From the NCBI RefSeq assembly GCF_000150275.1, contig NW_002060961.1:957957-995270 (forward strand): 37,314 bases of DNA. The letters run 5' to 3'. Within the stretch, counting starts at the first letter, position 1. Each line of letters opens with the position of its first letter. This document shows, one piece after another, positions 14,333 to 37,314 of this stretch. The notes under the pieces were generated by a model that saw only the letters and a list, made by a program, of their open reading frames with translations, was not told the DNA's origin and made no database searches. This DNA comes from Trichoplax adhaerens. Taxonomy: Eukaryota > Animalia > Placozoa. Position numbers and translations under genes: made by a program.

Positions 14333-15409
14333 ATGGCTGAAGGAGGTGATGCAACAGTAGTGTTAGTGACAGGTGCGTCGGGTTTCGTTGCTACCCATGT
14401 CTGCTATCAACTCTTACAGAAAGGATATAAGGTTCGAGGGACAGTGCGCGATCCTAGCAATGAAAAGAAATGTAAACCATTACGAGAATTATGCCCAGAT
14501 GCAAAATATCCCATCGAATTAGTTCGTGGTGAATTATCCGAGAAGGAATGCTGGATAGAAGCGGTGAAAGGCTGCCATTTTGTCGTCCATATCGCTTCGC
14601 CTTTCCCACCTGGAAGTCCCAAGGACGAAGATGAAATTATCAAGCCTGCTGTTAATGGTACTCTCAATGTTTTAGAAGCTTGTGCTCAATCGGGTACTGT
14701 CAAACGGGTTGTTTTAACCAGCTCTGTAGCCGCCATTTCCAATGGTTTCCTGTGGGAAACAGGTCGATTGTATAATGAAAAAGATTGGACCGATCCAAGT
14801 CAAGCTGCACCTTACGAAAAGAGTAAAACATTAGCTGAGAAAGCTGCATGGGATTTTATGGAGAAATTACCTAGCGAGCAAAAATTCGAATTAGCCGTGA
14901 TTAATCCAGTTCTTGTACTTGGACCTGTAATGCAAGGCTCCAATTGTACAAGTATGGAAATACCCATGCGTCTGTTAATGCGGCAAATGCCAGCAGTGCC
15001 CAAGTTAAATTTCCCCATTATTGATGTACGTGACTTAGCAGCTGGCCACATTGCTGCCTTAACTTCGGATAAAGCCGCTGGCAATCGACATATTATGGTC
15101 TCGGAGAATATGTGGTTCGCAGAAATTGCTAAAGTATACGCCGAAGAATTTAAATCACAAGGTTATCGTGTACCGACCTTTGTCTCACCTAACTGGATCG
15201 TTCGGTTAATGGCGTTTACCGATCCAACCCTTAAGATGGCTACTAAAACGCTCTCACGAATTGGCACTTATGATACTACGCAAGCCAAGGAACACTTAGA
15301 CATGAAAACAAGACCAGCTCGAGAGACAGTCATTGATATGGCTTATAGTTTAATAGAGCGCGGTTTTGTACCTAAAACTGCGAAATATACCGGACCTAAG
15401 AGAGCTTAA
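14333..15409 (+). CDS. Extended SDR, NAD(P)-dependent epimerase/dehydratase family (aldehyde reductase II / dihydroflavonol-reductase-like), copy 1, intronless CDS
   Basis: 358-aa ORF with TGASGFVA Rossmann motif, RGTVR, HIASP, PAVNGT, VVLTSS and catalytic YEKSK (YxxxK). Confidence 0.93.
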   Translation: MAEGGDATVVLVTGASGFVATHVCYQLLQKGYKVRGTVRDPSNEKKCKPLRELCPDAKYPIELVRGELSEKECWIEAVKGCHFVVHIASPFPPGSPKDEDEIIKPAVNGTLNVLEACAQSGTVKRVVLTSSVAAISNGFLWETGRLYNEKDWTDPSQAAPYEKSKTLAEKAAWDFMEKLPSEQKFELAVINPVLVLGPVMQGSNCTSMEIPMRLLMRQMPAVPKLNFPIIDVRDLAAGHIAALTSDKAAGNRHIMVSENMWFAEIAKVYAEEFKSQGYRVPTFVSPNWIVRLMAFTDPTLKMATKTLSRIGTYDTTQAKEHLDMKTRPARETVIDMAYSLIERGFVPKTAKYTGPKRA

Positions 15410-16513
15410 AACGGCCTGCAAACGGAAATGGACCTGCAGCGGTGAACGCCTTTTATTTCTTATTACAACAAAAATTATAATGACCACTATATTTGCTTAC
15501 ATATGTTTATATTGTCAAAAATAAGGAATTACTTTCTACTTTCTCAGCGGTGCCTACTGCATGATTTGAGCCGAATGTGCCATGTTTGTCAGTTCGTCAA
15601 TACGAGTTGATTTCTTGCATTCAAGTAAAATGTTCAACACTTTTGCCAAATAAAAAAACATTCTGAATGACTATCGCGATTCCAGTGTTGAATATACTTT
15701 ACTAGAGTAGGTTGGCTACGCCTAGAGGTAAGAGCCGTATCTATCTGTTACTGTGTGTGAGCAGGAAAAGAAAGTCGCTAAAGTAAAGTAGTCCAGTCGT
15801 CGAGGTTAACTCCAGCAGTGCCCTTGGGAGGGTCATGAATCCCATTGCATGTAAATAACGAATTCATTAATGAGTGACAGATTTTACAACCAGCTGGAAA
15901 CCAGCTGTGCTCTATGTACAGTACTGTAAAGTATGTCTGTATCCTGGGCTATCGTTGACCTCAACATTTCCAACGACTACCTACACGGAAGAGTTGATTA
16001 TTTCACTTAGTCATAAAATAACATGGACGACTTTGGCGTTTACCTTTTCCACGTCTCCAAGCTATCGTCCGCCATCGTCCATCCAGCCTTCCTACCGTAA
16101 CGCATCTTGTGCATTGTACAATGCCCATACGCTGTTGATGTTTGTATAGTAGTGTAATGAGCCATTTGACAGTCCAACTACGACAGCGTATACAATCCAG
16201 TCATGTATGGGTAGCACAGCCAGCGTCTGTACCAGGAGTACCTACTAGACCGTATCGAGCACGTGACATGCGACGACTGAGTTCGCTCGCGCAGGCGTGT
16301 TGTGTACACCGGCGAGTTTAGTTGTCATCTAGAAGGGCCTAACCAACCCGAGGATTTTTACCCTCCCTGGCTTTAAAACTAATGAAAATAGTAGTTTGAA
16401 GAGGATTGTTGCCAGCAGATTGATCGGAGATCCATTTTCAAGCGTTCAAAATTAGTTGATCAATTTGAATTGGCTAAAAGAATTATTCTTTATCGTGCTG
16501 AAGAAGGAGAAAA

Positions 16514-17590
16514 ATGGCTGAAGGAGGTGATGCAACAGTAGTGTTAGTGACAGGTGCGTCGGGTTTCGTTGCTACCCATGTCTGCTATCAACTCTTACAG
16601 AAAGGATATAAGGTTCGAGGGACAGTGCGCGATCCTAGCAATGAAAAGAAATGTAAACCATTACGAGAATTATGCCCAGATGCAAAATATCCCATCGAAT
16701 TAGTCCGTGGTGAACTAACCGAGAAGGAATGCTGGATAGAAGCGGTGAAAGGCTGCCATTTTGTCGTCCATATCGCTTCGCCTCTCCCAGCGGCACTTCC
16801 CAAGCACGAAGATGAAATTATCAAGCCTGCTGTTAATGGTACTCTCAGTGTTTTAGAAGCTTGTGCTCAATCGGGTACAGTCAAACGGGTTGTTTTAACC
16901 AGCTCTGTAGCTGCTGTTTCCAATGGTTTCCTGTGGGAAACAGGTCGATTGTATAATGAAAAAGATTGGACCGATCCAAGTCAAGCTGCACCTTACGAAA
17001 AGAGTAAAACATTAGCTGAGAAAGCTGCATGGGATTTTATAGAGAAATTACCTAGCGAGCAAAAATTCGAATTTGCCGTGATTAATCCTGCCCTTGTACT
17101 TGGACCTGTAATGCAAGGCTCCAATTGTACAAGTATGGAAATACCCATGCGTCTGTTAATGCGGCAAATGCCAGCAGTGCCCAAGTTAAATTTCCCCATT
17201 ATTGATGTACGTGACTTAGCAGCTGGCCACATTGCTGCCTTAACTTCGGATAAAGCCGCTGGCAATCGACATATTATGGTCTCGGAGAATATGTGGTTCG
17301 CAGAAATTGCTAAAGTATACGCCGAAGAATTTAAATCACAAGGTTATCGTGTACCGACCTTTGTCTCACCTAACTGGATCGTTCGGTTAATGGCGTTTAC
17401 CGATCCAACCCTTAAGATGGCTACTAAAGCGCTCTCACAAATTGGCACTTATGATACTACGCAAGCCAAGGAACACTTAGACATGAAAACAAGACCAGCT
17501 CGAGAGACAGTCATTGATATGGCTTATAGTTTAATTGAGCGCGGTTTTGTACCTAAAACTGCGAAATATACCGGACCTAAGAAAGCTTAA
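16514..17590 (+). CDS. Extended SDR (aldehyde reductase II / DFR-like), copy 2, intronless CDS
   Basis: 358-aa ORF with the same motifs; 14 aa differences from copy 1. Confidence 0.93.
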   Translation: MAEGGDATVVLVTGASGFVATHVCYQLLQKGYKVRGTVRDPSNEKKCKPLRELCPDAKYPIELVRGELTEKECWIEAVKGCHFVVHIASPLPAALPKHEDEIIKPAVNGTLSVLEACAQSGTVKRVVLTSSVAAVSNGFLWETGRLYNEKDWTDPSQAAPYEKSKTLAEKAAWDFIEKLPSEQKFEFAVINPALVLGPVMQGSNCTSMEIPMRLLMRQMPAVPKLNFPIIDVRDLAAGHIAALTSDKAAGNRHIMVSENMWFAEIAKVYAEEFKSQGYRVPTFVSPNWIVRLMAFTDPTLKMATKALSQIGTYDTTQAKEHLDMKTRPARETVIDMAYSLIERGFVPKTAKYTGPKKA

Positions 17591-18929
17591 AAGAGGGAAT
17601 GCTTTCTTCCTTACTCTCGATCTTTGCAGATACGTGTACAACCGTCTGTAAACGGAAATGGACCTACAACGATGGCGTAAATCAATCCCATGGATACAAC
17701 ACTACGATAGTAGACTTGGATCGTACGCACTTGCAGACGATCCACCGCCTTTAATTTCCTACTACAACTAAAATTCTAGCGTGCTGTAGTTATTAATAAT
17801 ATCAATAACATTACTAAGCAATAGGGTGTCCAAGCGTTGGTCATGGAATCTTAACGCTGCCTAACCATTTCCAAGAACTTGACGTCGATTGACAGTTTAC
17901 GCCCCAAATTTGATACCAAGAATAACTTAATATACTTATATAAATAGACTGAATTCTTTCAAGCTTGATTAATTATAATGCAATTATCGAAAAATAGAAA
18001 TGACATGCTAACTGAGTGAGAATATTATCGATTGAAGACAGTATTTTAAATACGTAGATCTTGGTAGATTGAATTTCTCAGGTCTTAAGACTACTTACTA
18101 AATAAAGTATATGTAAAAGAGTGAATCAGGAGAGGAAAAACTGAAGCCAACGAAGAGTTGTTAGACAATCCCTTAACTTGAAATGGCTAAAATCCTATTC
18201 TAACAGTTTATATTAGTCATTGGATAGAGAATTTCAGAATAGACATTTAAAAATGCGAATTGGCTGCGCGCCTTGTACCGTGCATACTAACATAACTGGA
18301 TAACTAGTTTTGCTTTTGGTATCTCATTTCCTTGCCTTACTCTCGCATCATTAAGCATCGATAGCGCAAACCATAGTAGTAAAATAAAACAAATTTGATA
18401 TTGGAATTTTCTTATATTGGTTTTATTATTCTTTTGTTACGACTTAGAGCAGAAAACTCTTGATATCGAGTTCGATGTAACTACCACATTGCTTAATCTG
18501 TACTCTATATCTGTCATAAGTTATACTTCAACTATTAACATAGATTGGCTAATCGTTCTATACTGATTAAACTATGCTAAGATCAATAAAAAAGTGCTCA
18601 TCACTTTACGTCGTAGACAATGATGCAATTTTTGTTGATCGTTTGGAAGAAATGGCCAAGCAATGCTGTAGAAAGAGGATGAGTGCAAACGATAGATTTT
18701 CACTCTAAATCACTATCGATTCTATATATACTATATACATATATGTTATCAATATTAATAGGTACGTGAATGATCTACAGTATATTACGAATAGTTGCAT
18801 CCAAAGTGGATAATTACGCAATCAATCTCACTTTAATTTCATTTACTAAAATAATATTTGGGTATAAATGAACATCTATTGATATTTAATGAGGGCGTTT
18901 TTATACTTGTACACGATAGACTATTGCTT

Positions 18930-20227: not shown

Positions 20228-23200
20228 TCAATTTATATCGTATTGATTGGGATCTTGTAGTTGATGAATCTTTACAAGATGGCTATTCTTAAAGTTTTTC
20301 AAGTTACTAGTCAATAGGATGAAAAAATAGAATGATTTCATTAGACAAACTCTCAATACATGTGCAAAACTAATTCAATAATTAAAATATCAACTTGCCT
20401 CATATTTTGAGGTGATAGAAATATAAATTGGCGATGGGTTACGTGAGAAGTGAAATTCAGCAATGTCGACGTCGCTATTTCTCGGTTATACATATCCTAA
20501 AGGTAACAAATTGTCCAATTTTAGTAGCCATTTTTCTTTGTCAGTGTTATAATCTTCAATTGAAAGGCTATATACTGCAACTCATTCCGAGGTATGAATA
20601 ACACTAATGATATAAAATCATAACTACGAGTAGGCCTACTCCACTATCAAAGTGATTTCTTGACATTGAAGAAAAGAGTAATCAAATTTTACCATGAAAA
20701 CATCAAATTCGTCCAAGCATATAATTGGAGGGGACATGGATTGAAGAAGGGATATGATCAAAGCAACAGTGGCCAAAGATCTTTCTCCACCCGAGAGAGA
20801 TAAATGACTGCAATGGCCACCACGTGCTGCTAAACTCTATATTTTGTGAGGGTAGAAATGAAAACATTTTATAAGAAAGCCAAAGCTTAATTATGTTGGC
20901 TTGATGATTAACTTATCCACTGCTACTTTATTGCAGCTAAGAAACAGAAATTATCGAAATGATAGCAATACTGTAAGGATTACCTGAATTTGTAAATGAA
21001 ATTCTTCATTAAAAGGATCAATTCGTAATTTTGCACTTAAGCCACGTCTTGAAAAAAGACTTCCAATAGTTGTTGTTACTCTTTCCGCTAGTGATTTCTG
21101 TATAAATTTACATTTTGCTTCTCGAAGATGAACATGCTGTTGCAAGGTCTACCAGGCAATGTCCCAAATGAAAGACAATCCATATGTAAGAGAAGATATC
21201 GAAATGAATATTCAGTGGATTTAAATTGAATTTTAATAGCCATAAAGCAAGGCGATATTACTATTAAATATAGTATGAATCTTACTGAGAATATATCAGA
21301 TAAAATCTGCGAACAAGCTTTCCTTCTATAATAAGTTATTTGCGCTTCTTTAATAGCTGCAATAATTTCTTCTTTTGTGCCAATTTCCTCCTGTAGTTTT
21401 TCAAGGCTTTGCTCCTTACGATAGATTTTGTGATCGAGATCTTCAATCTTTTGCTCCGTGATAATTCGATCTGCTGCAATTTTACATGCACTAGCAGTAC
21501 AAGTCTATGATAATTAAAATAAATCAAAAATTGATTTCTCTTTTTCGAATAACCTTCATAGAACGATAAAGAAGATACTAACCAAGACTTTTTCTTGTTG
21601 ATGGTTCATTTTTTGTAGCCAATAATTCTTCTTTTCCTCTAATTCGTCTATAGTTTTATGAAGGTATTTACATTTTTCTAATTTCTCCCGGTATTGTAAC
21701 GTTTTGTGCTTAATTTCATTCTGTTGGTATTGAAGATGAATTTAAACCATTAAAATCTTTAGTAATCTTAATATAACCAAGACCAAGTAATTTTCTAATT
21801 TTTTCCCCATATTGTAACGTTTTGCGCTTAATTTCATTCTGTTAGTGTTCAAAATGAATTTTTAAACTATCAAAATCTCGAATAATCAAGCTGTTTTCTA
21901 AACTTTCACAATATTGTAGCGCTTTGCGCTTAATTTTATTCTGTTGGTGTTCAAAAAGAATCTCTATAATCAATATCTTCAATAATCTTAATATAACCAA
22001 GATCAAGCAATTTTCTAATTTTTCACAACATTGTAGCGCTTTACATTTAAATTCATTTTGTTGGAATTCAAAACGAAGTCTGTATCAAGATCATTAATTA
22101 ATAGAACCATGAGCAATCTATTTTTAAACTTTGACGCATAGTAACATCTTACATTTAATTTCATTTTGTTGCGATTTAAAACGACATTCTATGTCGATAT
22201 CTTTAGTACTCTTATTGTAGCCATGATCAATCTATGTTCTAAACTCTCATCCTAGAAGAGTGCCGTTATATTTTTATCGCATTTCTATGACAATATCGTC
22301 AAATAGTATTCATGCAGCCAAAAATCCAGCCAACTTCCAAGTCTATCTATAGAAAAGGACAATGCCATATTTGCTCTGATGGATAATTTAGACTAATTTT
22401 TTCCGCCTAAGAGGATAGGCTGCATTCTTCTAGTACTTAGTGAGTTATTGTAAATCATTTAATGTATGCTAACGACATTGTAAAGATTATTATAAAAGTC
22501 TTATATGGGTATTCTTCAATAACGAGCAATTTGTTGTCAAATATTATTCTCTTATCCTTCATAGGATACTATGGCAAAATATCTTTACGAGGATGAATTC
22601 TTGTACTAATTCTATCCAGTTATTGTCATAGACAGTTGATAAATGAATTAATTAATGATGAATTTACGAGTGCATTTTGTACTATTCAAGAGCTCAATTA
22701 GAGATATTATTAAATATGAAGACTAATGCTATTCTTAATGAATACTATTCCATAGTTTTAATTTAATTATGGATATGATTCAGTTATGTGTATTCTTTGC
22801 TAGTGTTTTTTTGATATATACAGTATAATACTTTTTCTTGACGTTGTAGGAATACAAAATATTTGGGAAAGTATTCGGTAGTACCAGCGGTAGGAATTGT
22901 TCTATTAAAATAGTATAAAAATAACATCTTTCGCCTCATAACTGCGACGTAGAATTCTCTTCTAGTTTAAAGCGTATACATTTATAGATAATTAAGTGTA
23001 TGAGATGCTAGAAATTGAGAGATATAGGTATTACTATTCATGGAATCATTTTTTGATATCATGAATTAGCAACTCGAGTTAGCCATTAATTAATGCAGTA
23101 CAACATTATTTTTCGGTCAGGCTAGAAGCTATAAAGTTCCTGGAAGGAAGAAAATCTTTCAATTTTCAAATTGATACTAAGATTAGAATTTTACCTGGTA

Positions 23201-26200
23201 TTCGTATAATTTTTCTCTAACTTGCTGCTCCTCACACTCAATTTCTTTCTTTTGACTTTCCAATAAATGGACTGTTTTTAAAGCCTCCTGATAATTCTGA
23301 TATGCCTGCTGCAGCTGCAAGAGTCGGTAAATGAGAAAGAATATTCTCACAATTCAAGCTGGAATGGGCTGCGAATTGACTGTTAGCATAAACTAATTAG
23401 ATGCTCCGTACGAGTTTTTCTTCATCGTTAATTTCTTCTTGGCATGTTTGCAATTCTTTTTCCTAATACAAATTCATGAGAAACAATAATATGCATACGA
23501 GTCGATTCTAATTCAATAATTATCCATCAACTGCATGCATATTCTATCTTACTAATTCTGAGCTGTCTTCTTGCACAAATTCCGTACTTTTAATGTCTTC
23601 TATTTCCTTTTTAGTCGTAGGTTAGTTATGTTATAAAGTTAAATGAAAATGGATTTAATGTTCTTATACACAGCTGATTACCATGGAAAAGCTTACATTT
23701 TGTAATTCTTGAGTTTTATCTTGACAGGCTAACATAGCATCGCATATTGAAGCTAATTCTTCCTGTAGTTTTAGAAAAGAAATATCTATCATCATGCAGC
23801 AATCTCGTGAAAAAAGTATTGCATTCAGTGTACTATACCTTTTGAACTGAAATGACATTGGTAGTAAACTGGAATTGAAACTGTGATTTAGTAATAATTT
23901 GATTTATTTTCTCGGTTCGTTCCCTGCGTTTGCTATCATTAAACATACCAGAGAGTTGTTTAAGTTCATCCTTTATACATAATAATTTTGATATCTTATT
24001 TATACAAAATAATTCCGATATCGCATTAGGATACCATTAGCACTTGATATACATCACTGAGCTAAGAAGATTTTATAACCTATCTTAAAGTTATATATAA
24101 AAATCTTAGAATGATCTGGAATAAAGCTCAGATAGGTGACCATGCAGGTGAAAATAGGAATACAAACTATCAGGGCATAGCAACATTTACTATCCATCAA
24201 GATCGATGCATGGCAATGCAAGATTGTAATCTAAGTGATATTGGCTTTACTATTTCCGTTTTGCATATTTATTCCACATAAATGAAGGGTCTAACCAATT
24301 ACCTATCGCAAGATAAGAGCTAAAATCTAAATCTATCGCTCAACAATCTAATTTTGGTTTTTTAGAAAATATTGAATCTCTAATATCGGCTATTGTAAAC
24401 ACATGAATAACTTTATATGCTATTGCAAATGACAGATGGTCATTGCAAGTTTCAGAGTTGTGTATAAATCAATCGTTGTTGATGATATGAAGCAAGAAAC
24501 AATATTGCTATTAGAAGCAACGATTATGGGATATTAATATTTTCTATTGGGATGGGGTAGACAAACAGGGTTGGAGCAATTTCGTTTTTGCTTTAGCTTT
24601 CCGATTTAGGGTAAACTAAGCTAAGGGTTTGATACATTAAGCAAATAATCAAATTCGGTCGGTCTACTGAGCAAGAAGAGTAGCTTAGCATTTAAAGTTG
24701 ATCGTAGAATAAAGATCTTGAAACCGCTTGGTTATCCTTTCATGAATTTTTCTACTTACTTAATTTCTTGCTGAACATCTTCAATTAGATAATCAATATG
24801 GGGGCGAGTATTGGAATAGCATCGATGATTTTTGCCGACTTCAATGCTATCCCCAGTAAGTGTATAAGCCTAAATAGACCCAAAGATACAAATAGTAAAT
24901 GGGATTTCTTTGATTCAAACAGATTTAATGATTTTTAGACACAAAGATATGAATAGCAAATGAGAATTTCCTTAATTTAAAGTAATTTTTAAAGGTTTAA
25001 CTCATAATACCACTTTCTTAATTCATGAAAGTGGACGGAAAAGATAGCTTAAATTTAGCCTACCGACCTGGAGCTGGTGTGCTTGTTGCTGGCACATAAA
25101 TGCTCTGGCTTCTTGGCTACTTTCAATCAAGAGAGTTCTTTCGATTTGTTTCTGTTCGTGAATTAGAATATCAAAATTGAGCTTCGGAATATTAGAACTT
25201 CAAAGTGTTGAGTGAATAAAGAAGAAAAATGTTTCCGTCTTTTAAATTACAACTAAAATTGAAGTAGTTTAGGAAGCTGTTAAAGCTTCCAACTTTTCAA
25301 GAAATGCTACCATCCAACCAGCATTCGATGGTATGGCCAAAATTGAAATAATTAAGCAAGCTTTTAAAACTTCAATTTTTCAATAAATGCTACCATCTAA
25401 TGGCGATTCGATGATGCAGCTAAAATTGATATAATTTAGCAAGCTGGCAAAAGTTGAAGCTTTTTGATAAATGGTAACATCTAACGATGATTCGATGATG
25501 CAGCTAAAATTGAAATAATTTAGCAGGCAGGCAAAAGCTTCAACTTTTCATTAAATGCTACCATCCAACGATGATTCGATAATACTGCATTTTACAGCTG
25601 TCGCTTTAATCATGAAACCGCTCGTACTATTCTAGTACTACTGGCACGACAAATGAATATTTTTTCACCATTAAAATGACAAGAGTATCCTTGTCTATTT
25701 TAAGGATTACAATTATTCGACCGTGAAATCATTACCTGATCAATCAGACAATTGGTTATATTACAATTTTCCGCAATTAGCATATCCAACACTGTCTTAT
25801 AAAGACCCTGTCCTTCCTGCAATGATAGTTAATAAGCAAAGACGATAGAATTCAAATGCGTTTTACAGCAATGCCTCTCCTAACTAGCCATGCCGCCATT
25901 CAGTAGCTATTCTCTTTCTAAGGCAAATGAAACTTATAATGATAATTTACACCATCATCCATTCCAACTCATCTTACCGTAGTCGGGATATCATATGGCT
26001 TATCCTAGTTGAAAATGGCGAAATGAAATTACAGTGTAGACGTGTTAAATTGATTTTTTAGTTTAACAGAATAGATATTATAAACCTCTACCTGATAGCG
26101 ACAAACGATAACGGTTGGATACTTGGCGATTTTCATCTTTCGACAGACCTCTTTTAAAAGTTTGGCATCGTGGAAATTATGGCAGAGGAACGAAGTCAAG

Positions 26201-29200
26201 GCTCTACCAAGGCATCGCTCAATGGCTAAATTCCATTTTGGATCTCGAGTAGCAATATGGTAGCCTATCCATGACAAATCAAAGAAATTGATGACTAAAC
26301 TGTCTCTAACTTTCTTCCATAACTACGAAATTACCGCTATCACTTTCTAAACTAGTCAGGAACTATTTCTCTATCTCTGTCCTATAAGCAACAAGATTTT
26401 CATGGCGATACCTAGTGGCCCATATGGATTCCTGTGAAATTGTCCACGTTGTTTCATTTCATGCAAATGGCGGATTAATTCTGGCATATAACTGCCATAA
26501 ATAGCTAGTCTATTCCAGCGAGATGCTTTCAATCTGCCAGTTTCCTTTTCTAAATCGTTCAATTCCTGTTGCTGCATAGCAATATCTAACCTAGCCAAGT
26601 AATAAATTCATTTCTTATCCAATCCAAGGTTTCATTTTAATCTCAGTAAATGTTATTTCGTATGATGTATATCAAAAATTGATCTACTAAGTACTGTAGT
26701 TGATTGAGTTGATCCTTTTCGGCTTTAATTTCTTCCGATAGTTGCAATTTTCGCTGAGCATAACTAGATAATGCTGACTTCTGGCCAGAAAGTTCTTTTT
26801 CGAGTAAGGCAAATTGCTTACCTGCCTGCCCTAATAGCCTTCTACAATCAACAAGTCCAGTAGAGGTAATAGATCAATTCGATATTTTATTAGCTTATGG
26901 TTATTTTTTGAGTGATTTATAGCCAATGGCAACAGTTCACTCTTCCATAATATTCTCACTTTTGATTGATTTCGTTAAATTTAGTCTCTAGGCCATAGTA
27001 AGTGTTTTTTAAATGATCGACATTACACTTGATAGATTCATACTTTTGCTAGTGAAGGGATGGTCAAGGAATTAAGAATCATTCCAGACGTAAAGTTATC
27101 CATTGAAATCGTTAGTATTCTATCCTTTCCTGTTTTAATGGACTCTACAAAGTGTTTACTAGTTATTACCTTCAAATTGCATTCGTCTCCTTTGGCACAA
27201 TTATGTTCCTTCAAGAAGTCTTCTTTGCAAAGTTGAAGATGGCTCAATCGGTCGATTAATCGATTCAGTTCTCGTTCTAGCGCTTCTTTATCCCTTTGGC
27301 AATCTTGTGTATATTTCTATAACGGGATTTAAGTATTTATTAAATTGAATTTTGTTTTAGGATACAAATTAAAATTTAGATAGAATATTCTTATTTTTAA
27401 ACGGCTGCCACAAATATTTGCTAAAAGTATTCGTTTCTACGCCGATTGAACATACTTCAATTTCAATTAATTCTTCTTCAATTTCAGCTCGACGAGAATA
27501 AACTTGCTGAGCTTGGAATTCAATCTGTTTCAATTTCTGACAATATATGAGTTAAAAATTGTCATGACTATCATCTCGTTAATGCAGTAGTCTAACTAGC
27601 GCTTTTTGTACGATATATAAGGTAGATCAATCAATTAATTCTATTCTACCACGTTGAAAATTATTCCTAACGAATCGATCAGATCACAAATTCTATTCTG
27701 TTATACTGAAAAACATTTTATTTGTAAAATGAAGTAAAGCTCTAATTCTATTCTGTCATAGTTAAGGCCTATAACTCATTTATCATATGAAGAAAACTTG
27801 ATCAAATAAGTATTTCATGTTATATTGGCTGAGGAACGAGTTCTAACGTTATAATAGTTAGGATTGCAATAATGCAATACTCTACCAGTGTAATTACGAA
27901 TAGCTTACATTTTCTTCTTGGTAGACGTAAGCCCAAGCTAATTCACTTTTAAGTTGGGTTAATTGCTGATTGATTTCATCAATTTGATCAAACAATTTCT
28001 GCCTTTCCATTTTTTGTTCCAAATCATCTTGGAGTTCCTTCAGAGACTAGTCGAAGCCATAATCACAAACCGCTAAATAAAATCATGAGATGAATTGAAA
28101 TAAATCATTCTCTTATCTTACCTCCTCTTCCTTATTCAAGATATCTTGCAAGATTCGTTGTGATAATTTTGCATAATTGCAATTATTAATGAGCTGAGAT
28201 AGTTGAGTACCTTTGAGGTAAAACTGATGGCAGAAGCAAACACTTAATAATATGGCGGAGGTAAAATTGCACTTTGCCAGTATACCAGGCGTTATAAGAC
28301 ATTTCTATAATAGCTTATAACAATTTAAAATTTACTATAGGATCAAAATTGTAATGGTTCTGTTATTAATTTATTTCTACAGGTTAAATTTTGACATCTT
28401 ATAGAATATGATTAAAATTATGATATCATGGAGCCATGGATCTAAACGATTGTTTATGCAAGCAGAAAGTTGTTGCCGAACTTTCATATACATGGATTTA
28501 CTGAGAATATTAAGTAATATGGAGATAAATTGAAAATTCTTATGAAGAAGTAGCTTAGATATACACTATGCTACCATTCTTTACAATGATGGAATGGTCT
28601 TTGATATGTCATTTTGAATGATACTAAATATATTGGCTATATTGCAACTCATGTTGTAGCATTTTAAGAGAAATTTTAAATTAATATGCTACCGTAATTA
28701 GTATACATTTTTTTCGTAATAAACATGGAAATAACTACTTTAGAGCTAGGAATATCTTATACTCTAGAAAGCGCTGATATTCCTTTCCGAACATTTTGAT
28801 TACTACAAGTAAATTCCATCGATTCTATTCTGATAAAGTTGTCAATATAGTTTTAAGCAAATAATATCTAGAAATGTTTTGGAATTAAACGAGTACCTGA
28901 TACATCTTGGAGGGATGATGGCTGCTTAAGAACTCTTTGCTAGCATCCTGAGTTAAAAAACAAACTGGATTATCGACTTGAATATCGAAATGGTCCAAGA
29001 TTGCCATTAGCTCCTTCTTCTCTTCAGCAACAATGAATCCTAGTAAGAAATACTGTTTAGTTCCAGTAGGATTTTCTTTATTTCAATCATCCTGCTCAAT
29101 ACCATTATTTTAAATGCATGGCCTATCCAGCTCAAGCTAGAATACGAGTAAGCTATGTACCTTTCGAAGACTTTATCTTGTAGTTTGCATGGCCATCTTG

Positions 29201-32200
29201 CCATAAATCTCTTTGAATGATGATTTTACTACCAAATTTTTCCGGATAGTAACTGTCGGAACCATCATTTGCTAAGGTTATAATAATGCGAGCGTAACTA
29301 TAATGTTGGTTTAATGATCAACCAATTTTAGTAAGGATTAAATATTTTTTAATAGCAAAATTTCAAAGTTCATTTTTGTTTAATATGATTTAATAAATAC
29401 GTAAATGAAGTCTATTAAACGAATAGCCGTATTCAAGCCTATTCTTAGTATGCAAAATGAACGTGCAATAAAATTCAAAAAATTCTTAATTAAAAGACTA
29501 ATTCTATATTCTACTCGCCACTGCTACTATCGATTTCAATAATGATTCATTTTAGTTAAAAATTGAATGCGGTCAGAATTAAGCGAAATGGGAGGAATAA
29601 AGATTTCATTTATTATAAATCTATTAACTAAAATTGAGATTATGCAAATAAATAAATTCGCTATAGCAATAATTACTCTATTAGTAATTCGACTTCCATA
29701 AATCCGATTTAAAATTAGAATTATACACGTGAATATATGATTATTTTTTCATCAGAGCAAAATCATACCAAAGATTAAACATGAAGATTCGTAGATATAC
29801 TTGTATGACATGTTGCATGATTTAAATCAAAAAAGGTCCACTATAACCTAATCTATCAGTAAAATGATCTATTAAATGCAGTTATAATCTACAAGATACC
29901 TGCTGCCTTTCTTAATTAGCCCTTTCATTGAGGTTGCTCGATTAGTTAATCGAGAGCGTCCACCCAAACCAACAATTATGCCCACCATGATTGCGCTTTT
30001 ACCACCTAGGAGTAAATGTTTGGATTTATGTAGGTTATAATTAATTGTACTAGCTAAATGGTGAGGATTGTCTCCAATGAGCAATGTGCTATTTAATTTG
30101 CCTAGTCAATATCCTATAAAAACTTTTACTACCGACGTAAATAGGAGGCAATATAAGCAACAAATCTGCCATCTGCAATATCACTTAGTATTTATTCATT
30201 AATTTAAGTCAACTTAAATCTCAATTTTGAAATTTTTATCGCTAATTCAATATAGATTAAAGTATTCCTCATGCCTGCTATGAGGGATATGAGTGAAAAC
30301 TAAGAAACCATAGTAATGTAGTTCTGTTCAAATAGGACTTACTTCCATTATTTCCAATGATAAAGTTAACATTTTTACCAAAGGTAATTTTTAAATTTTT
30401 ATGGCACATAAAATTGATTAATTGAATTTGCTGCAGTAATCCAGCTTCATTGCTAAAGCTTCCATGGTCCACTTTCTAGCATTTAGAATATAAAAATTCA
30501 ATTTCAGCAAGAATAATTAGTTAATGTTCAACTTTGATTCCTTTAAACGGAAATTAGTTATGAAGACGTAAGAATATCAAGCTATTTGGCCTTGCCTTTG
30601 ACTAAAAATCATGTAGGTTCTATATTGATTAATTTATCTAGGAACTTGCTATAAAAACCTAACCTTGACTCCATTAGCAGTTGAATTTTTAACTTTACTG
30701 GCATGATGTGTCAGGTCATCGTCAAGATTGCAGATCTATATCGCGTATATTATATGCAATATTCTATAAGTAGATATTTACACTTTAGGGTTCGCTGTGA
30801 TACGGCCAAATAGTAGCATCATCAAACCTGTAGGACATCTGCTACTGCTTTTTTCTCTTTACCCTTGCCTATCGGCTTAATTGGCTGATTGATGCGATCA
30901 CAGGCCTATGTTTGTCGTGAATGATTAGTAGTACACTCGTATATACAAGAAGTGATAAACCTAATTAGTGAATCCCTATTCAGTAGCCATCGCAGATATT
31001 CCTATCCTCGTGCTACGATTTTAGGCAAAAAAGTTCACCGGTTGTCGTAAGACTGTTTCTGGATTGCAATCTTCTGAGCTGGTGTCGCTACCATCTATTC
31101 CAATATCATCCTGTTAAATTATCAAATTAAAAATCGATCTTACAACCATCCCATAAAGTGATTCCCTTACTACGTTAAGTAGTTTATAAATAAAGCTTTA
31201 GCCATTAACCTGGCAATTGTCTTTAAGGTTAATTGTAGCCAAGCTTTTACCATTGGTGGCATTAATTTCTCCATCGGATTGATAGAAACGTGCTTTTTTG
31301 CTGATTCTACTAGAAGGTAACACATCGCTTTCCCGAAACCGCTTTTCTGGCTTAATTCTATCCGTATAATGCTGTACACGTTGTACAAAATAACTAATGG
31401 AATAGAATAAAGAAATGATACTCGAACCGACAGCTACAAATATATGACGCTTGCCACAAGACAATAATCAACTTTAAGACTCCATATAACGACTACAAGA
31501 CTTTAGTTCGTGAAATAGAAAAAAGAGACGATATTTGAACTCTTATTTGCAGATATATAACGACTGTAACAAAACGATAATCAATTTCAAGACTATATAA
31601 ATGACTACAAGATATTCCTTTTTGGAATAGAATAAAGAGATGATATTCAAACCGTTACTTGCAGATATGTAATGATTGCAAAAAGACGATAATCAACTTC
31701 AAAGACTCAATATAAATGACTGCAAGGCTTTAGTTCGTGGATTAGAATAAAGAAATGATAATCGAACCGATAGTTGCAGATATACGCTCATACAACGATT
31801 GCAACAAGAGCAAAACTAATTTTAAGACTTAATATAAATGACTACAAGACTTTAGTTTGTGGAATAGAATAAAGAAATAATACACGAACCAATAGTTGCA
31901 GATATATAACGATTGCAACAAGACCACAATCAATTTTAAGACTCAAATATAAATGATCGTAAGACATCAATTTGCGGAATAGAATAAAAAAACATGATTT
32001 GAACTGTGGTTTGCAGAAACATAACGATTACATCAAGATGATAATCAATTTCAAGAGTCAATATAAATAACTGCAAGACGATAGATAACTTTAAGACTCA
32101 AGATGTAAGACTATAGAATTTTAGTCCGTGAAACAGAATAAAGAAACGATATCCAAGCCGTTATTTGCAGATATGTAATGATGTATTAAGACCATAATCA

Positions 32201-32607
32201 ATTTGAGACTAAATAGAAATGACTGAATGACTTAATAGCTACAAGTCTTATCCCCAAATTTAATGATTTAACTTTGAAAAATCTCAAAGTCAATTTCTGC
32301 TGATCAGTTTGCAATTCTGGATATAATTAAAACTGTACATCCGCATAAATGTTGATATCCGAACGTGCGTGTATTTTACTTTTTTCCATCTAACGAGATG
32401 GCTAAGCTTTCCCTCAAATTTGATACTTTGAAAAGTAAATTGTAATCAGATGATATATTCTATTTGATCGTTGCTAATTAATTTATAATCTTAGTATGAA
32501 ATTTGCCAATTCGTTAAACTATAGCGCTGTTAAGTGATCCTTTAGAATAATACAGATTAATGAATTTACCTAAAGAAACCTCGAATATCTGTTGCATAAG
32601 ACGGCAT
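20228..32607 (-). CDS. SMC6: SMC6 paralogue A (divergent, complete, about 32 coding exons, about 1,170 aa)
   Basis: Hand-spliced frame is open throughout: INFMCH, Walker A GNNGSGKS, TNRA, Q-loop DNPVCFLTQD, FYLKGTQL, LAWAYV, hinge PYGPLG...WNLAIERCLG...NCLIDQ, signature LSGGERS, Walker B/D-loop [10 protein letters not shown] and QFIFLSPQ. Stop at 20228-20230. The first exon (32570-32607) is inferred from phase compatibility and is less certain. Confidence 0.9.
21721..22250 (-). repeat. Intronic tandem copies (102-118 bp) of the acceptor plus 5' part of SMC6-A exon 21583-21720
   Basis: On the minus strand AACAG|AATGAAATTAAGC-like text recurs, with acceptor-equivalent positions at 21721, 21839, 21941, 22058 and 22166. 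Confidence 0.85.
25255..25585. repeat. Intronic tandem repeat, about 81-bp unit, about 4 copies
   Basis: AAATGCTACCATC...ATTCGAT...AAAATTGA recurs near 25302, 25385, 25468 and 25553. Confidence 0.85.
31395..32230. repeat. Tandem repeat, about 110-125-bp unit, about 7 copies, in the inferred first intron of SMC6-A
   Basis: GAATAGAATAAAGAAATGATA...TTGCAGATAT...ATAATCAA.TT.AAGACT recurs near 31400, 31512, 31625, 31740, 31862, 31977 and 32130. Confidence 0.9.
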
Positions 32608-34077
32608 CGTTTCAAAAGATCAGTTAATCCTTTTTGCAGAGATTGACTACAGTCTGTAAATAATAATGAAAGTAAGAAATGGGAAGTGGCTTTTTAATCA
32701 AGCTAACAATTTAAAGGGGAAATGATCCTGCGACATTCTGAAATCGTAGCGCTTAATTTAAAATCAGCGTAAAAAATATCACTAATTGCATTTAAAATAC
32801 CAGTACTAGACTTTTACAGCCGTCGCAACTTGATTTTAATGCATTGATAGTAAGTTAACCTCCTTAAGTGGCTAATTTTTAAAGTTCATATCCACATTGT
32901 TGGAACAATTTTGTTAATAATTGCTTAGATCTAAAGTTCCAGTAGCGAATGAAGACTGCCTTTCGATATTCCAAGTAGTGATAATAGACAAGGAATAAAA
33001 CTTACTATTGCTTTTCCAAGATGTAAGAATACTTCGTTGCTATCAAATTAGAATAACCAAGATAGTAATTCCAGTGTCGTGACAGAACAGATCGGTTAAA
33101 ACAATTTATCCTTTCAGTGTCATAAATTTATATCCAACTCAAACTTAAATCTCATACTGTACTCGGTTAATCTCTACTACCACAACGACAGCTGATATAG
33201 TATGCCATGCTAACTCAGTGCAAATAATCCACAACATCAAACATTGACCTATTACTAACTGTAAATTTAGGACAAAAATTGGATAATAATATTTAGTCGC
33301 TTATCGCTATTAGCAATAATCTAAAATTATTTTGGGGGGTTAAGGCGATAGCTTAGTTGCACCGTCATCTAGAATGTAATGATCATCATGATCGTGGCCT
33401 CGATTTATGTTTATTAATGATTGTCGTGCTGCACATTATACAGATGCATGCCTAAACTGCTAGTAGAATACATTTGTGTATTCTATAAGACAACCATGGA
33501 CCTGCTATGCAGGTCAGTAAATCAAATCATCACATCGACAGAAACATTAACGAATAAATGAACTTTATTAGAGTTATATCAGTCGCAATAACTCCCTTAT
33601 AATCATTCATAAATCGCTTGAAAGTATCATGGTTATCACCTAGTTGACGAGTCCAAAGATTGAAATTCGTATCGGTTGTAGCAGTCATAATACTAGTATA
33701 ACGCACATTGAACAACATAATGATGTACAGTACAACAACATTGCTAGCAAGAAATTCAGCAAATGACGTCATCGCTAAATCTAGTGCAATTAATTTTAAA
33801 ACAGACAACTTTTAACCGAAGAAAGTAAATGTACAATTGTAATAAACAGTGGATATGGCTAATGTTGAATACCAAAGATTGTAAAGAACAAGTTTGTAAA
33901 AATAGGAATCTAATTTCCAGCGTATAAACTCACCTTCTACTGCCATCAACAAGCTTAAAATCAATCTAGCCTGTACAGAATTATTAAACAGTAGATAAAC
34001 AGTATAAAAGCGAACGCTTTACGGATAATAAGCATTTAACACTACAGTTTTATTTAAAATACAGAAATGGACATATT

Positions 34078-37000
34078 TCAGGACTGTCTAACTAAGCTAT
34101 CCGTAATTGGTGGTTGATTATTTTCACGTGCAGGATCTTGTAAACGGTGAATTCTGATGTTTTCCTTAAACTTTAATTTGCTAAAGATCGGTATGTAAAG
34201 GTAGAAGTTAGGCTAGAATTTTCTTTTACGTAATTAGCTTACCTGCGTAAACCATACCAATGAGTATCTGGCACAACGCTGATATGATTCCCTCACCTCA
34301 TGTTCTGTGGAGATAGAAATATAAACTGGCGACGTTTTCTTTTCGTGGCTAATTGTAGCAAAGTATCCATGCACAAATCTCGATTGACCATGTCCTGTAT
34401 AAATAGGGTAACGACTTTAAATTACGGCCATAAACTTCATAATGAAAGTTTTTATAAAAATATAGTTTTATTTACTTAGGAGAGTTAATCTACAAGTCAA
34501 CAACAACATACCATAAAAACGTCAAATTCATCTAAACATTGTAAAGGTGAATCCGTTGCTTCCCAAAGCGCGACGATAAAAGCAACGGTTGAAAATGATC
34601 GTTCACCACCTGACAATGAACCGGTGCCAGAGGTTTTTGCATTGGCAGATATCTTAACCTAAAAGTTTACGTGTCAATGAATCACAATCCAAAATGGCTA
34701 TTCCTGAACTGCACTACTATAATTATAACATACATCTAAAGATATCTTTTTTTTGTTATGATCAATCAGCATAGTACCAAGATATCCTCTTTTTGCCAAC
34801 GTTTTACCAAATGTAGTGATAATTCGTTGAGTTAAAATTTTTTGCATTCCTGTAAATAGCTTGTGTCGCTTCTTTAATTGATTGTTCAGTTGCTATCCGA
34901 AAGAAATCATCGATACAGAAACAGGTACATATTAAGAAACTAAATCTTTATCCATCAATAAGTAATATAGCTTGACAACAGTATAGAGTCTTGGTAACTA
35001 TTGACTTTTACTTACTATCCGAAAAAAATCATCACCATAGAAATATGTACATAATAAGAAACTAAAACTAACATCAATCAGTAAGAAATACAGCTTCAAT
35101 AACTTTTAGTACGGTACTGCTTGTAGTAATAGCATTTGCGTCATGACCAATTTCAATCGCACATGGAGCTACTAGCTTTGATGAGGTGAACCTGTGCCAT
35201 TTCTCGTAGCTCCAAAAGTGATAGTGCCATCAACATAGACAAATTATCCTTATCTTTGGTGTAAAAGTGAATTACCTTAGATGTACTATCAAGTATAGTA
35301 AGGTGACCGCTTTGTTCATTATACTTTTTTTTTGCAATACCGTAAGCGGCCAGAATTTCTTCACGACTACCAGTTTCTTTTTCATGGTCCCTTAAACGTT
35401 TTTTCTTTGCCTTAATTTGTTTATTCAATGTTGAAATATCTAAACTGGAATTACATCGCGTTGGAGATAACTTGAAAGCGGCTTCCTTGGACGTCTATAT
35501 GTGGTAATGAAAGTACATAAGCCCAATTGAATGGATTGAATCACTGAACTGATATATATTTTATAGACATATCTTACCTCTACGGTGTTTTCTTGATTAG
35601 AAGTAGTTTGTAATTTTTCATTTTTCTTACGATACAATTGATCAATTTTTGATTGCAATTCATTCCATTGACTATCATAACTCCTGTATTTTACTTCAAT
35701 TTCTTTACGTTTTTCCTAATTAGAAATGATTAATAATCGTTGCATAAGGGCTGTACACTGTACAGTATAGAAATAGAGTTAACCCCCAAAATTGCATACT
35801 TTAAGCAGTTTCATATCTTCCACGATCTTTTGTATCCCATTTTCGAGGTCATTTATCTGATCTTCCAATGTTGTAGCTTTTGTGGCTACGTTGCGGTATG
35901 ATACCACGAGTTTTTCTAACTAATAATCGAAATTGCTATATCAAATTAGTGGTAACATGACATTGTAGAAATAGTAAACTAGAGTTGAGACAGTAACAAG
36001 AAATTTATAATAAATTTGAACCTCTTCTTTATCTTTCTCAATTTCTTCCTCTCTGTCATGTAATTCCGTTTCCTATATATTAAGATTAGAAATTGTAGGA
36101 CTGATAAAAGAGTTTGTAATTTCCTTGTACTTTACTAAATTGTTGTTGGACTTAGATGTTGTCTTACCAATGCTGTCAAATCAGAGGCTTTGACCTCAAA
36201 CGATTGCAACTCTTGGATTTCCTGTAAGAAATAATATTAAGTCAGCCTTTATTAATTGCTACCATTACCTGTCATAAATTATGAGTCATATTTATTTACA
36301 TTCTTTAGTGAATTCATTCGGTCTTGATGATAGCTAATTGATTGGCGTATTGAATTATAGTCCGTCTGTGTTATCATCCCAATATCGATTAGTAAATGTA
36401 ATTAAACTTCAAAATATTATTCTTGTATATATATACTGTGATAAATACAAGTATAATTTAAGACCTTAATTTTATCTAAATTCCTCTGAATTGATGTCAT
36501 TTGAGCACTAGCGTTGCGAATGTCATTGTTGCAATTTTCAAAAAGCGATTTTCTACGTCTATTAAATAAAGAACGTTTATTAATTTCACGCCGACTGACA
36601 TCATAAACATCAACAACATCCTCTATTTTCATAGTGTGATAACATCTATCTACACTTTTACAATGATAAAAATTTGTAATCATCGACTGATCTATCCGTA
36701 CCTTATTTCTTCTGTTACATTTCGTACAAAATAATGAACTCCACGCCGAAAATTGGAATAATATCTGAAGTTAGCGCCGCCATAAAGATGGTCACCATTG
36801 ATTATATAGGCCTGCGTATTAAGACAACGTACATCCTAAGCACGTAGAAACAATCACTTTGAAATTTTAAATAGTTTCACTACAGTTTACAATACCTCTC
36901 TGACATTTCCAGGAACATTTCTACCTGTCAAAAAATTTATAGCTTCTTCTCGATGTTCGATAAGTAAAATGTTTTCGATTCCTTTCTATAACGTAGAAAA

Positions 37001-37147
37001 GTGATAATGTATTCAATCGAACTTACACTAAATTCATTTAATTTACAAATTCAAACAGCTTGCAGCATTACCTGATCAATAAAGCAATTTATAACATTGC
37101 TATTATTGATATCTAACGATTCTAAAACAGTTGGGTACCGACACCGC
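34078..37147 (-). CDS. SMC6: SMC6 paralogue B (canonical), 3' half from hinge to C-terminal head; the 5' part lies beyond the window end
   Basis: Exons give YPTVLESL...NCFIDQ|[10 protein letters not shown], a coiled coil, [42 protein letters not shown]|[15 protein letters not shown] and RLQDPAR. Stop at 34078-34080. Confidence 0.93.
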
Positions 37148-37314
37148 TGGACATTAAGAAATACATGTATCGTCAATAGTAGTTTCATGTTTGACAACTA
37201 CTTTATCAGGCCATTAATATCGTATCAGAAATATCAGTGTTTCTTACAAATTTGGGAATATCATGTGGCTTATCATATTAATATCAACAACGATAAACGA
37301 AATCAGTCACGATG

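What the first reader, a model, noticed from the sequence alone, without database searches (positions are those of the whole stretch)
20228..37314. Two tandem, anciently diverged, intact SMC6 paralogues: a possible second SMC5/6-type complex
Seen: both copies share exon lengths and phases across the post-hinge arm (110, 94, 66, 54, 51, 120, 138 and 219 nt), yet the arm sequences barely align by eye (e.g. EIEDIKSTEFVQEDSSEL vs [18 protein letters not shown]). Copy A has no stop or frameshift and keeps Walker A, Q-loop, LSGG, Walker B and D-loop. Known: SMC6 is usually single-copy in animals; SMC5/6 acts in recombination repair and silences extrachromosomal viral DNA. Inference: exact length conservation despite heavy divergence means A has been kept by selection as a full-length ATPase able to pair with SMC5. 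It could form a specialised (germline or antiviral) SMC5/6 variant.
Basis: partly seen in the sequence, partly recalled or inferred. Interest (0 to 1): 0.8.

Follow-up and report, generated by a model that had tools for sequence, protein, structure and literature searches.

The report
Tandem SMC6 gene cluster in Trichoplax
The placozoan Trichoplax adhaerens carries side by side one intact, deeply diverged SMC6 DNA-repair ATPase gene (A) and a second SMC6 lineage (B, plus a young extra copy just outside the window) whose exons change faster than their introns, so this animal may build more than one kind of SMC5/6 complex.

Summary
On the minus strand lie SMC6 gene A (20228-32607; 27 exons from the Walker-A exon to the stop, no stop or frameshift) and the C-terminal 14 exons of SMC6 gene B (34078-37146). 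B is cut at the window end by an assembly gap. A and B are about 38% identical with saturated synonymous sites.

Three things change the picture:
- The duplication is lineage-specific: A and B are sisters (100% support) inside animal SMC6.
- There are three copies. B has a 97-98% copy, B', 13.6 kb further on. B' carries LSCGE and FDEFDVSM, and Trichoplax sp. H2 shares both changes.
- The B lineage is the one that looks unusual. Its exons diverge faster than its introns, nonsynonymous to synonymous changes are 77:9, and B in this assembly has a lost splice donor and a +1 frameshift.

A must have been under purifying selection for nearly all its history. Expression of A, A orthologues in other placozoans and SMC5 pairing were not testable. 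NSE1-4 are single-copy. The scan noted the neighbouring copies before (s1-739431, s1-739531).

The parts
30343..30475 (-). A exon 1 of the conserved core: head N-lobe with the first part of Walker A (…FIIGNNG + split Ser codon)
   Evidence: Identical to TRIADDRAFT_31729 (P0279), which matches my model residues 10-253 at 100%.
28897..30005 (-). A exons 2-4 (29900-30005, 29161-29297, 28897-29039): rest of Walker A (GKSAIM), head beta-sheet, Q-loop (NPVCFLTQDAS)
   Evidence: SMC6 HMM hits with E 1e-13 to 1e-23. Lengths 106/137/143 are the same as in B, B' and H2.
26695..28223 (-). A exons 5-10 (28122-28223, 27909-28046, 27456-27536, 27170-27316, 26960-27048, 26695-26841): N-terminal coiled-coil arm
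   Evidence: Exon lengths 102, 81, 147 and 89 equal those of the H2 B-type gene.
25978..26590 (-). A exons 11-13 (26412-26590, 26092-26264, 25978-26004): hinge, including a 27-nt micro-exon (DKPYDIPTT)
   Evidence: Lengths 179/173/27 are the same in B' and H2. The hinge exon hits the S. pombe SMC6 hinge 5mg8_B at E 4e-6.
21286..25816 (-). A exons 14-23 (25736-25816, 25068-25151, 24760-24869, 23839-23932, 23697-23762, 23553-23606, 23412-23462, 23195-23314, 21583-21720, 21286-21504): post-hinge arm.
20228..21148 (-). A exons 24-27 (20984-21148, 20693-20836, 20399-20496 with a GC donor, 20228-20306 with the TGA stop): head C-lobe with LSGGE, Walker B, D-loop, FLSPQ
   Evidence: Aligned to human SMC6 986-1021.
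30664..32607 (-). Probable A 5' exons (32570-32607 with ATG MPSYATDIRGFF, 31210-31393, 31039-31110, 30828-30905, 30664-30735). Low coding scores; not verified.
   Evidence: The KRF..SS..KKAR motif resembles the B-type N-terminus.
32608..34077 (.). Spacer of 1.47 kb between the stop of B and the putative start of A (head-to-tail arrangement)
34078..37146 (-). B exons 14-27 (37072-37146, 36896-36985, 36702-36811, 36465-36558, 36300-36365, 36168-36221, 36022-36072, 35800-35919, 35578-35715, 35276-35494, 34734-34892, 34512-34658, 34297-34394, 34078-34180): post-hinge arm and head C-lobe with LSGGE and LDEFDVFMD. The frame is intact.
37147..37314 (-). Intron of B running into the assembly gap. Ns occupy 37315-39820 in scaffold-extended coordinates, so B's hinge is missing from the assembly.

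Best explanation
The locus is a head-to-tail SMC6 gene cluster of Trichoplax adhaerens.

History and state of the copies:
- An old tandem duplication on the placozoan branch produced two SMC6 lineages, A and B-type.
- A is complete in the window. It has kept every intron position, the arm length, the hinge and all ATP-binding and hydrolysis motifs while its sequence diverged to about 38% identity. That requires long-term purifying selection on a working SMC ATPase.
- The B-type lineage duplicated again recently, giving B and B'. It evolves fast, with exon divergence above intron divergence.
- B' and its Trichoplax sp. H2 counterpart have a changed signature motif (LSCGE) and a changed Walker-B/D-loop stretch (FDEFDVSM).
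- B in this assembly shows a lost donor and a 1-nt insertion.

Inferred mechanism:
- SMC6 works only as the partner of SMC5, bridged by NSE4 with NSE1 and NSE3.
- NSE1-4 are single-copy here, so A and the B-type proteins most likely compete for the same partners. That would give alternative SMC5/6 holocomplexes that differ only in the SMC6 subunit.
- Which one is the housekeeping form is open. The evidence leans to A as the stable form and B-type as the diversifying one.

Shown: gene structures, intactness, motifs, phylogeny, rates, and copy numbers of NSE1-4.
Inferred: selection on A, complex formation, and division of labour.
For: Structure and intactness.

SMC6 identity:
- SMC6 HMM scores are 817 bits for A and 928 for H2 B-type.
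- Against solved structures, A's head scores 212 bits for SMC6 and 42 for SMC5. Hinge and signature exons also hit SMC6.

Phylogeny: (A:0.76,(B,(B',H2)):0.50), with 100 SH-aLRT for both the placozoan clade and the B clade.

Conservation: A keeps 23/25 invariant columns and 51/57 columns at least 90% conserved. B keeps 47/50 and B' 50/54.

Neutral-drift simulation: at least 5% random hits never leave A's frame open.

Genome-wide copy number:
- SMC6 matches occur only in this cluster.
- NSE4, NSE1, MAGE/NSE3 and NSE2 each have one locus.

B-type rates:
- NG86 omega is 1.4-2.6.
- Per-branch nonsynonymous:synonymous counts are 31:4, 18:1 and 28:4.
- Head exons against the introns between them: 34/528 vs 24/2497, p 1.3e-12.
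- For contrast, mammalian SMC6 has mean dN/dS 0.116 with no positive-selection signal (PMC11431564).

The B' motif changes are shared with H2.

A's N-terminal 248 aa are annotated as TRIADDRAFT_31729 and match my splicing at 100%.
Against: - No transcript, splice-junction or protein evidence for A could be reached.
- A-specific profile searches, covering proteins of 212-674 and 453-1440 aa, found no A-type protein other than the 248-aa partial model. None came from Trichoplax sp. H2 or from run assemblies. These searches score only the 8000 candidates that share most words with the query.
- A's rate within placozoans is unknown because no orthologue was found.
- A is slightly less conserved at key columns than B-type, and significantly faster with 3 of 5 outgroups.
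- A uses one GC donor.
- SMC5 was not located, so its copy number is unknown.
- B and B' both contain assembly gaps. The lesions in B could be sequencing errors next to a gap.
Confidence: 0.6

Rival explanations
1. One reading: B is the ordinary housekeeping SMC6, and A is the extra, specialised (germline or antiviral) subunit.
For: B-type is somewhat closer to the SMC6 consensus: 928 vs 817 bits, and 29-33% vs 25-30% identity to other animals. A is faster in relative-rate tests with 3 of 5 outgroups.
Against: B-type copies evolve with no sign of purifying selection. Omega is 1.4-2.6 and exon divergence exceeds intron divergence. They have duplicated. B' and H2 have a non-canonical signature motif. 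B in this assembly has a donor loss and a frameshift. That is unlike a housekeeping SMC6; in mammals dN/dS is 0.116 (PMC11431564).
Confidence: 0.25
2. A is a relic: a gene silenced or inactivated very recently, intact only because too little time has passed.
For: No full-length model or transcript-derived protein for A exists in public protein sets. It has one non-GT donor. It has lost 6 of 57 highly conserved residues, for example W to L after the signature motif.
Against: - A has zero stops and zero frameshifts in 3105 nt, and all 26 acceptors and donors are usable.
- Only about 2% neutral change would already be expected to break the frame.
- The donor AG|GCAAGT fits the usual GC-AG intron consensus (my own knowledge; not tested here).
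- The same public sets also lack a full-length B-type model for T. adhaerens, so absence reflects poor annotation rather than a dead gene.
Confidence: 0.1
3. B and B' are not two genes but two haplotypes (alleles) of one B gene, laid in tandem by the assembler. The locus would then hold two SMC6 genes.
For: Both copies sit beside N gaps. They are 97-98% identical over a 13.6-kb period. The H2 contig shows a single B-type gene and ends right after it.
Against: B' differs from B by about 8% of residues, including catalytic motifs. The H2 gene shares the B' states in exons 23-25. So both sequence types are real and older than the H1/H2 split. The H2 contig end is what a collapsed repeat would give. 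This rival does not touch the A-versus-B finding.
Confidence: 0.2
4. The excess of exon and nonsynonymous change among B-type copies reflects gene conversion between copies, or low-quality sequence, rather than positive selection.
For: Mosaic pattern: exon 2 is identical in B and B'. H2 groups with B' in exons 23-25 but with B in the long intron 2. Several H2 states equal the A or consensus residue. Gaps lie nearby.
Against: - Conversion from a constrained donor would import mostly synonymous differences, but observed nonsynonymous:synonymous is 77:9.
- Introns between the affected exons are about 1% diverged, against 6.4% for the exons.
- Two independent assemblies (H1, H2) agree on the B' motif changes.
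- No stop codon appears among about 90 codon changes.
Confidence: 0.2

Closest known systems
Eukaryotic SMC6 (Smc6/Rad18; human SMC6 in PDB 9lwi, yeast Smc6 in 7qcd and 7tve)
   Same: Same architecture and motifs: N-lobe Walker A, Q-loop, two long arms, hinge, C-lobe signature LSGGE, Walker B, D-loop. A's head matches solved SMC6 at E 1e-61 and SMC5 only at 1e-9.
   Different: Only 25-30% identical to other animal SMC6. Present as three tandem genes rather than one.
Arabidopsis SMC6A / SMC6B(MIM)
   Same: Two SMC6 genes with single SMC5, NSE1, NSE2 and NSE3. The paralogues share the essential function, since the double mutant is seed-lethal (PMC5793187).
   Different: The plant pair is a young, Brassicaceae-specific duplication (PMC5793187). 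The Trichoplax A/B pair is about 38% identical with saturated synonymous sites. It lies in tandem, and one lineage evolves fast.
Variant SMC subunits and kleisins of other complexes: meiotic SMC1B with SMC3, and NSE4A versus NSE4B/EID3
   Same: One complex scaffold with an alternative paralogous subunit. Specialised paralogues show positive selection or different substrate preference (PMC11431564).
   Different: Those are vertebrate or mammalian paralogues with known expression domains. Nothing is known here about expression. In mammals SMC6 itself shows no positive selection (PMC11431564).
Tandem clusters of fast-evolving host-defence (restriction-factor) genes
   Same: B-type copies show copy-number change, a nonsynonymous excess and exon divergence above intron divergence. 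SMC5/6 is a known silencer of episomal viral DNA and a target of viral antagonists (PMC11431564).
   Different: No link to any virus or mobile element of placozoans was tested. This is a resemblance only.

Membership tests
SMC6 (SMC5/6 complex subunit) | ABC-type head with Walker A in the N-lobe, and signature (LSGGE), Walker B and D-loop in the C-lobe, plus a Q-loop | tested here: met
   A has [29 protein letters not shown]. B has [26 protein letters not shown]. B' and H2 have LSCGE and FDEFDVSMD, so their signature is not canonical.
SMC6 (SMC5/6 complex subunit) | Closer to SMC6 than to SMC5, SMC1-4 or Rad50 | tested here: met
   P0279 (A residues 10-253) scores 212 bits against solved SMC6, 42 against SMC5 and 35 or less against others. 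All named top hits of the exon search are SMC6. A clusters inside animal SMC6 in the tree.
SMC6 (SMC5/6 complex subunit) | Central hinge flanked by two arms of matching length | tested here: met
   Hinge exons hit the SMC6 hinge 5mg8_B and 9lwi_A 513-564, and HMM positions 466-599. The arms lie at HMM positions 223-466 and 600-990 with no frame-breaking indel. Coiled-coil propensity itself was not computed.
SMC6 (SMC5/6 complex subunit) | Forms a heterodimer with SMC5 and binds the NSE4 kleisin | not testable with these tools
   NSE4, NSE1, NSE3 and NSE2 are present as single loci. SMC5 was not located because no SMC5 query sequence was available. No multimer modelling was possible for a spliced model.
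SMC6 (SMC5/6 complex subunit) | Expressed, spliced gene | not tested
   The only support is a partial public model (TRIADDRAFT_31729, 248 aa) that agrees with my exons 1-6. No transcript data were reachable.
Retained functional paralogue (as opposed to pseudogene) | Open frame and usable splice sites despite saturating divergence | tested here: met
   A has 27 exons and 3105 nt with only the terminal stop. pS against B is 0.77-0.81. In simulation, P(no stop) is 0.03 at 2% hits and 0 at 5% or more.
Retained functional paralogue (as opposed to pseudogene) | dN/dS below 1 against orthologues in related species | not testable with these tools
   No A orthologue could be retrieved. For B-type the test was possible and was not met: omega 1.4-2.6.

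The most novel reading that the evidence does not exclude
Placozoans keep a stable SMC6 (A) for genome maintenance. Beside it sits a birth-and-death cluster of B-type SMC6 genes under recurrent positive selection. Selection acts on the ATPase head and, in B' and H2, has remodelled the signature and D-loop motifs. That is the pattern of a host-defence gene in conflict with episomal DNA, viruses or selfish elements. It would be the first adaptively diversifying SMC6 in an animal, and an early-branching example of SMC5/6 used as an immune factor.
Probability: 0.3. Interest if true: 0.8.

Novelty: new member of a known kind. Interest (0 to 1): 0.6.

Why it matters
SMC6 is normally a single, slowly evolving, essential gene. 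The held literature lists it as single-copy in yeasts, fly and human, and the only duplicate listed there is Brassicaceae-specific (PMC5793187).

This locus offers a natural experiment on how an SMC complex can be diversified through its ATPase subunit. It holds an animal with three SMC6 genes in tandem. Two lineages are as different from each other as oyster SMC6 is from bird SMC6. One lineage changes its coding exons several times faster than its introns.

The locus also gives a concrete test of whether the antiviral or episome-silencing role of SMC5/6 predates bilaterians.

Practically, the public annotation represents these genes only by 248-aa and 385-aa fragments in T. adhaerens and a 567-aa fragment in Trichoplax sp. 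H2. Placozoan SMC6 is therefore mis-scored in comparative studies.

Tried and rejected
- **Representative search with A's Q-loop exon.** It returned no hit above 61% identity, which at first suggested A was unannotated. Later work showed the partial A model (P0279) is hidden in the 50% cluster of P0001.
- **Profile of a sponge SMC6 plus A and B exons (A2).** The top 120 hits were all vertebrate or invertebrate SMC6. A local test showed A would score only 341 bits, below the 520-bit listing limit, so this search says nothing about A.
- **MAFFT alignments of single exons to a full-length protein (A1-A4).** They are badly stretched. I used them only as word sources and A-specific probes, after local calibration.
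- **The look-up of encoding contigs for P0001 and P0279.** Records of the window's genome are withheld.
- **First ab initio exon chains.** They over-extended exons and added spurious small exons in intron minisatellites. I corrected them by A/B/H2 comparison and splice-site matrices.
- **Intron divergence of 4% between B and B'.** It was driven by the repeat-rich 2.2-kb intron 2. Short introns give 1.0-1.7%.
- **Literature.** No paper in the library treats SMC6 in Trichoplax or names the two locus tags.
- **Joined spliced model.** Those searches were done exon by exon by reference. Joined translations existed only inside local scripts, for the tree and the dN/dS counts.

Full report
**Where we are.** The window is G000:C1396:957957-995270 of a 105.6-Mb, 1414-contig assembly. 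A database protein that matches the neighbouring copy 100% is TRIADDRAFT_61012 of Trichoplax adhaerens, on a 1,364,312-bp scaffold. I fetched 30 kb beyond the window end. The window is followed at once by a 2506-N gap, and a second gap lies 14 kb further on. Coordinates above 37314 below are window coordinates continued along the scaffold.

**The observation.**
- Stop-to-stop reading frames of region A (20.0-32.7 kb) and of the region from 33.2 kb onward match colinearly on the minus strand. Head exons are 55-70% identical and arm exons 30-40%. blastn finds no A-B match at all.
- A profile built from 31 full-length SMC6 proteins anchors exons of A from profile position 58 to 1091. Those proteins came from a search with A's Q-loop exon.
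- I curated the rest with a small exon-chain program, splice-site matrices and A/B/H2 comparison.
- From the Walker-A exon to TGA, A has 27 exons and 3105 nt, with no internal stop. Every acceptor is AG and every donor GT, except one GCAAGT donor at exon 26.
- Exon lengths are identical in A and the B-type genes for 18 of 27 exons, including a 27-nt hinge micro-exon. All other differences are multiples of three, so all 26 intron phases are conserved.
- A plausible start (ATG at 32607) and four weakly scoring 5' exons precede the core. I did not verify them.

**Is A an SMC6?**
- The public partial model TRIADDRAFT_31729 (248 aa) is 100% identical to residues 10-253 of my A model. This independently supports exons 1-6.
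- That model matches solved SMC6 chains at 212 bits, SMC5 at 42 and other SMC or Rad50 heads at 35 or less.
- The hinge exon hits the S. pombe SMC6 hinge. The signature/Walker-B exon aligns to human SMC6 986-1021.
- Against the 31-sequence SMC6 profile, A scores 817 bits and the complete B-type gene of Trichoplax sp. H2 scores 928.

**How old, and who is the odd one?**
- A and B-type are about 38% identical over 1021 columns. That is like oyster versus sponge (35%) or oyster versus bird (37%). Synonymous sites are saturated, with pS 0.77-0.81.
- Yet in ML trees A and the B-type genes form one clade with 100% SH-aLRT support inside animal SMC6. Branch lengths are A 0.76, B stem 0.50 and common stem 0.47.
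- The duplication therefore happened on the placozoan branch. It is deep, but both copies are fast by SMC6 standards.
- A keeps 51/57 highly conserved columns, B 47/50 and B' 50/54.
- Tajima tests show A somewhat faster than B-type: 98-116 versus 75-93 unique changes, significant with 3 of 5 outgroups.

**Selection on A.**
- I could not obtain an A orthologue.
- Two A-specific profile probes would, in local tests, give 44-170 bits to any 300-aa piece of A and under 46 bits to foreign SMC6.
- In the 5.8-billion-cluster collection they found only TRIADDRAFT_31729, TRIADDRAFT_61012 and one H2 protein, over the size ranges 212-674 and 453-1440 aa.
- The argument for constraint is therefore indirect but strong. 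Random hits at 2% of A's coding sites give 3.5 stops on average, with P(no stop) 0.03. At 5% or more the frame never survives. A has diverged far beyond that with frame, splice sites, arm length and motifs intact.

**A third copy and a fast B lineage.**
- The stretch 33224-46664 is repeated at 46824-56664 with 97-98% identity. This gives B and B'.
- Genome-wide, SMC6 matches occur only in these three genes.
- B' has LSCGE for LSGGE and FDEFDVSM for LDEFDVFM, as an earlier scan note said.
- The Trichoplax sp. H2 'SMC6' (567-aa model) lies on a contig whose upstream genes are 99.4% identical to the DNA upstream of B'.
- I modelled the H2 gene in full: 27 exons, 3153 nt, an open frame, and the same LSCGE/FDEFDVSM. 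The B' states are therefore real and shared by two strains.
- Among B, B' and H2, Nei-Gojobori omega is 1.4-2.6.
- Parsimony on the three-taxon tree gives 77 nonsynonymous and 9 synonymous codon changes, p 0.0095 against neutrality.
- Exons are more diverged than introns. For the head exons, B versus H2 is 34/528 against 24/2497 in the introns between them (odds ratio 7.1, p 1.3e-12). For all shared exons against short introns, p is 1e-3 to 1e-5.
- No stop arose among about 90 codon changes.
- Mammalian SMC6 has mean dN/dS 0.116 with no positive-selection signal (PMC11431564).
- B in this assembly also differs from H2 in three ways: an exon-6 donor changed from GT to AT, one extra A in an exon-7 homopolymer that shifts the frame, and a 6-nt shorter exon 5. 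These are either decay or errors near the gap.

**Partners.** NSE4 (Nse4_C), NSE1, MAGE/NSE3 and NSE2 (zf-Nse) each give one locus. I did not locate SMC5, because no query sequence was available. If two or three SMC6 proteins are made, they must share one set of partners. Arabidopsis SMC6A and SMC6B do this with their single SMC5 (PMC5793187).

**Reading.**
- The proposal that A is the specialised extra subunit next to a canonical B is not supported. The features one expects of a specialised or conflict-driven gene are all in the B lineage.
- I commit to the following, with confidence 0.6. There are two old SMC6 lineages, both encoding SMC5/6 subunits that use the same single-copy partners. 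A is the stable one. The B lineage is diversifying, and one copy may be decaying.

**Limits.**
- No expression data were reachable.
- No A orthologue was found.
- Both B and B' contain gaps.
- The trees were quick ML searches (LG+G4, SH-aLRT only).
- dN/dS was computed by counting methods on few synonymous changes.
- The joined spliced models were never submitted to search or fold tools. All such calls were exon by exon by reference, and joined sequences existed only inside local scripts.

**Earlier notes of this scan.** Notes on neighbouring windows (s1-739431, s1-739531) had already flagged the tandem B/B' pair and the LSCGE motif. I re-derived both here.

Noticed in passing
beyond the window: scaffold-extended 46824-56664 (L003-L005), G000:C1396:1004780-1014620: A third SMC6 copy, B', is 97-98% identical in DNA to B but about 8% different in protein. 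It has LSCGE and FDEFDVSM in place of LSGGE and LDEFDVFM. Trichoplax sp. H2 (L006) shares these states.
   Followed up: yes
L003:3187 (exon-6 donor) and L003:3030-3111 (exon 7) of gene B, just beyond the window: Relative to the H2 gene, B has its exon-6 donor changed from GT to AT and one extra A in an A-run of exon 7 (82 vs 81 nt), which shifts the frame. This is either early decay or sequencing error near the gap.
   Followed up: partly
window 21674-22245, 25250-25580, 31398-32225: Minisatellite-like tandem repeats (units of roughly 80-115 bp, 74-82% alike) fill three introns of gene A. They caused spurious exon calls.
   Followed up: no
window 14250-15411 vs 16434-17592: A 1.16-kb direct repeat at 96.6% identity. 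The scan's own note calls it an SDR gene pair. GC content there is about 42%, against 31-34% around it.
   Followed up: no
window 1145-2296, next to the N gap 2297-2510: A block of tandem repeats (83-97% alike) abuts an assembly gap.
   Followed up: no
window 32570-32607: The putative first exon of A encodes MPSYATDIRGFF. The scan's note s1-753058 calls it PIP-box-like. The exon has a usable GTAAAT donor, but the link to the next exon crosses a 1.2-kb repeat-filled intron and is unverified.
   Followed up: partly
L005/L004 56219-56474 (B') and L006:10012-10267 (H2): The N-terminal exon of B' and of the H2 gene contains an internal duplication of about 33 aa (HKRWIDDEDDCIIVSSNTLP.KRRVEESQDSQQ). 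B has a single unit.
   Followed up: no
L006:16511-17622 (Trichoplax sp. H2 contig NOWV01000244.1): About 545 bp are present twice across a 20-N scaffold join, so the 54-nt and 51-nt exons appear twice. The contig ends about 270 bp after the gene's stop, as expected if a tandem repeat was collapsed.
   Followed up: partly
window 20398-20399: Intron 26 of A starts GCAAGT (a GC-AG intron) where B, B' and H2 have GTGAGG.
   Followed up: partly
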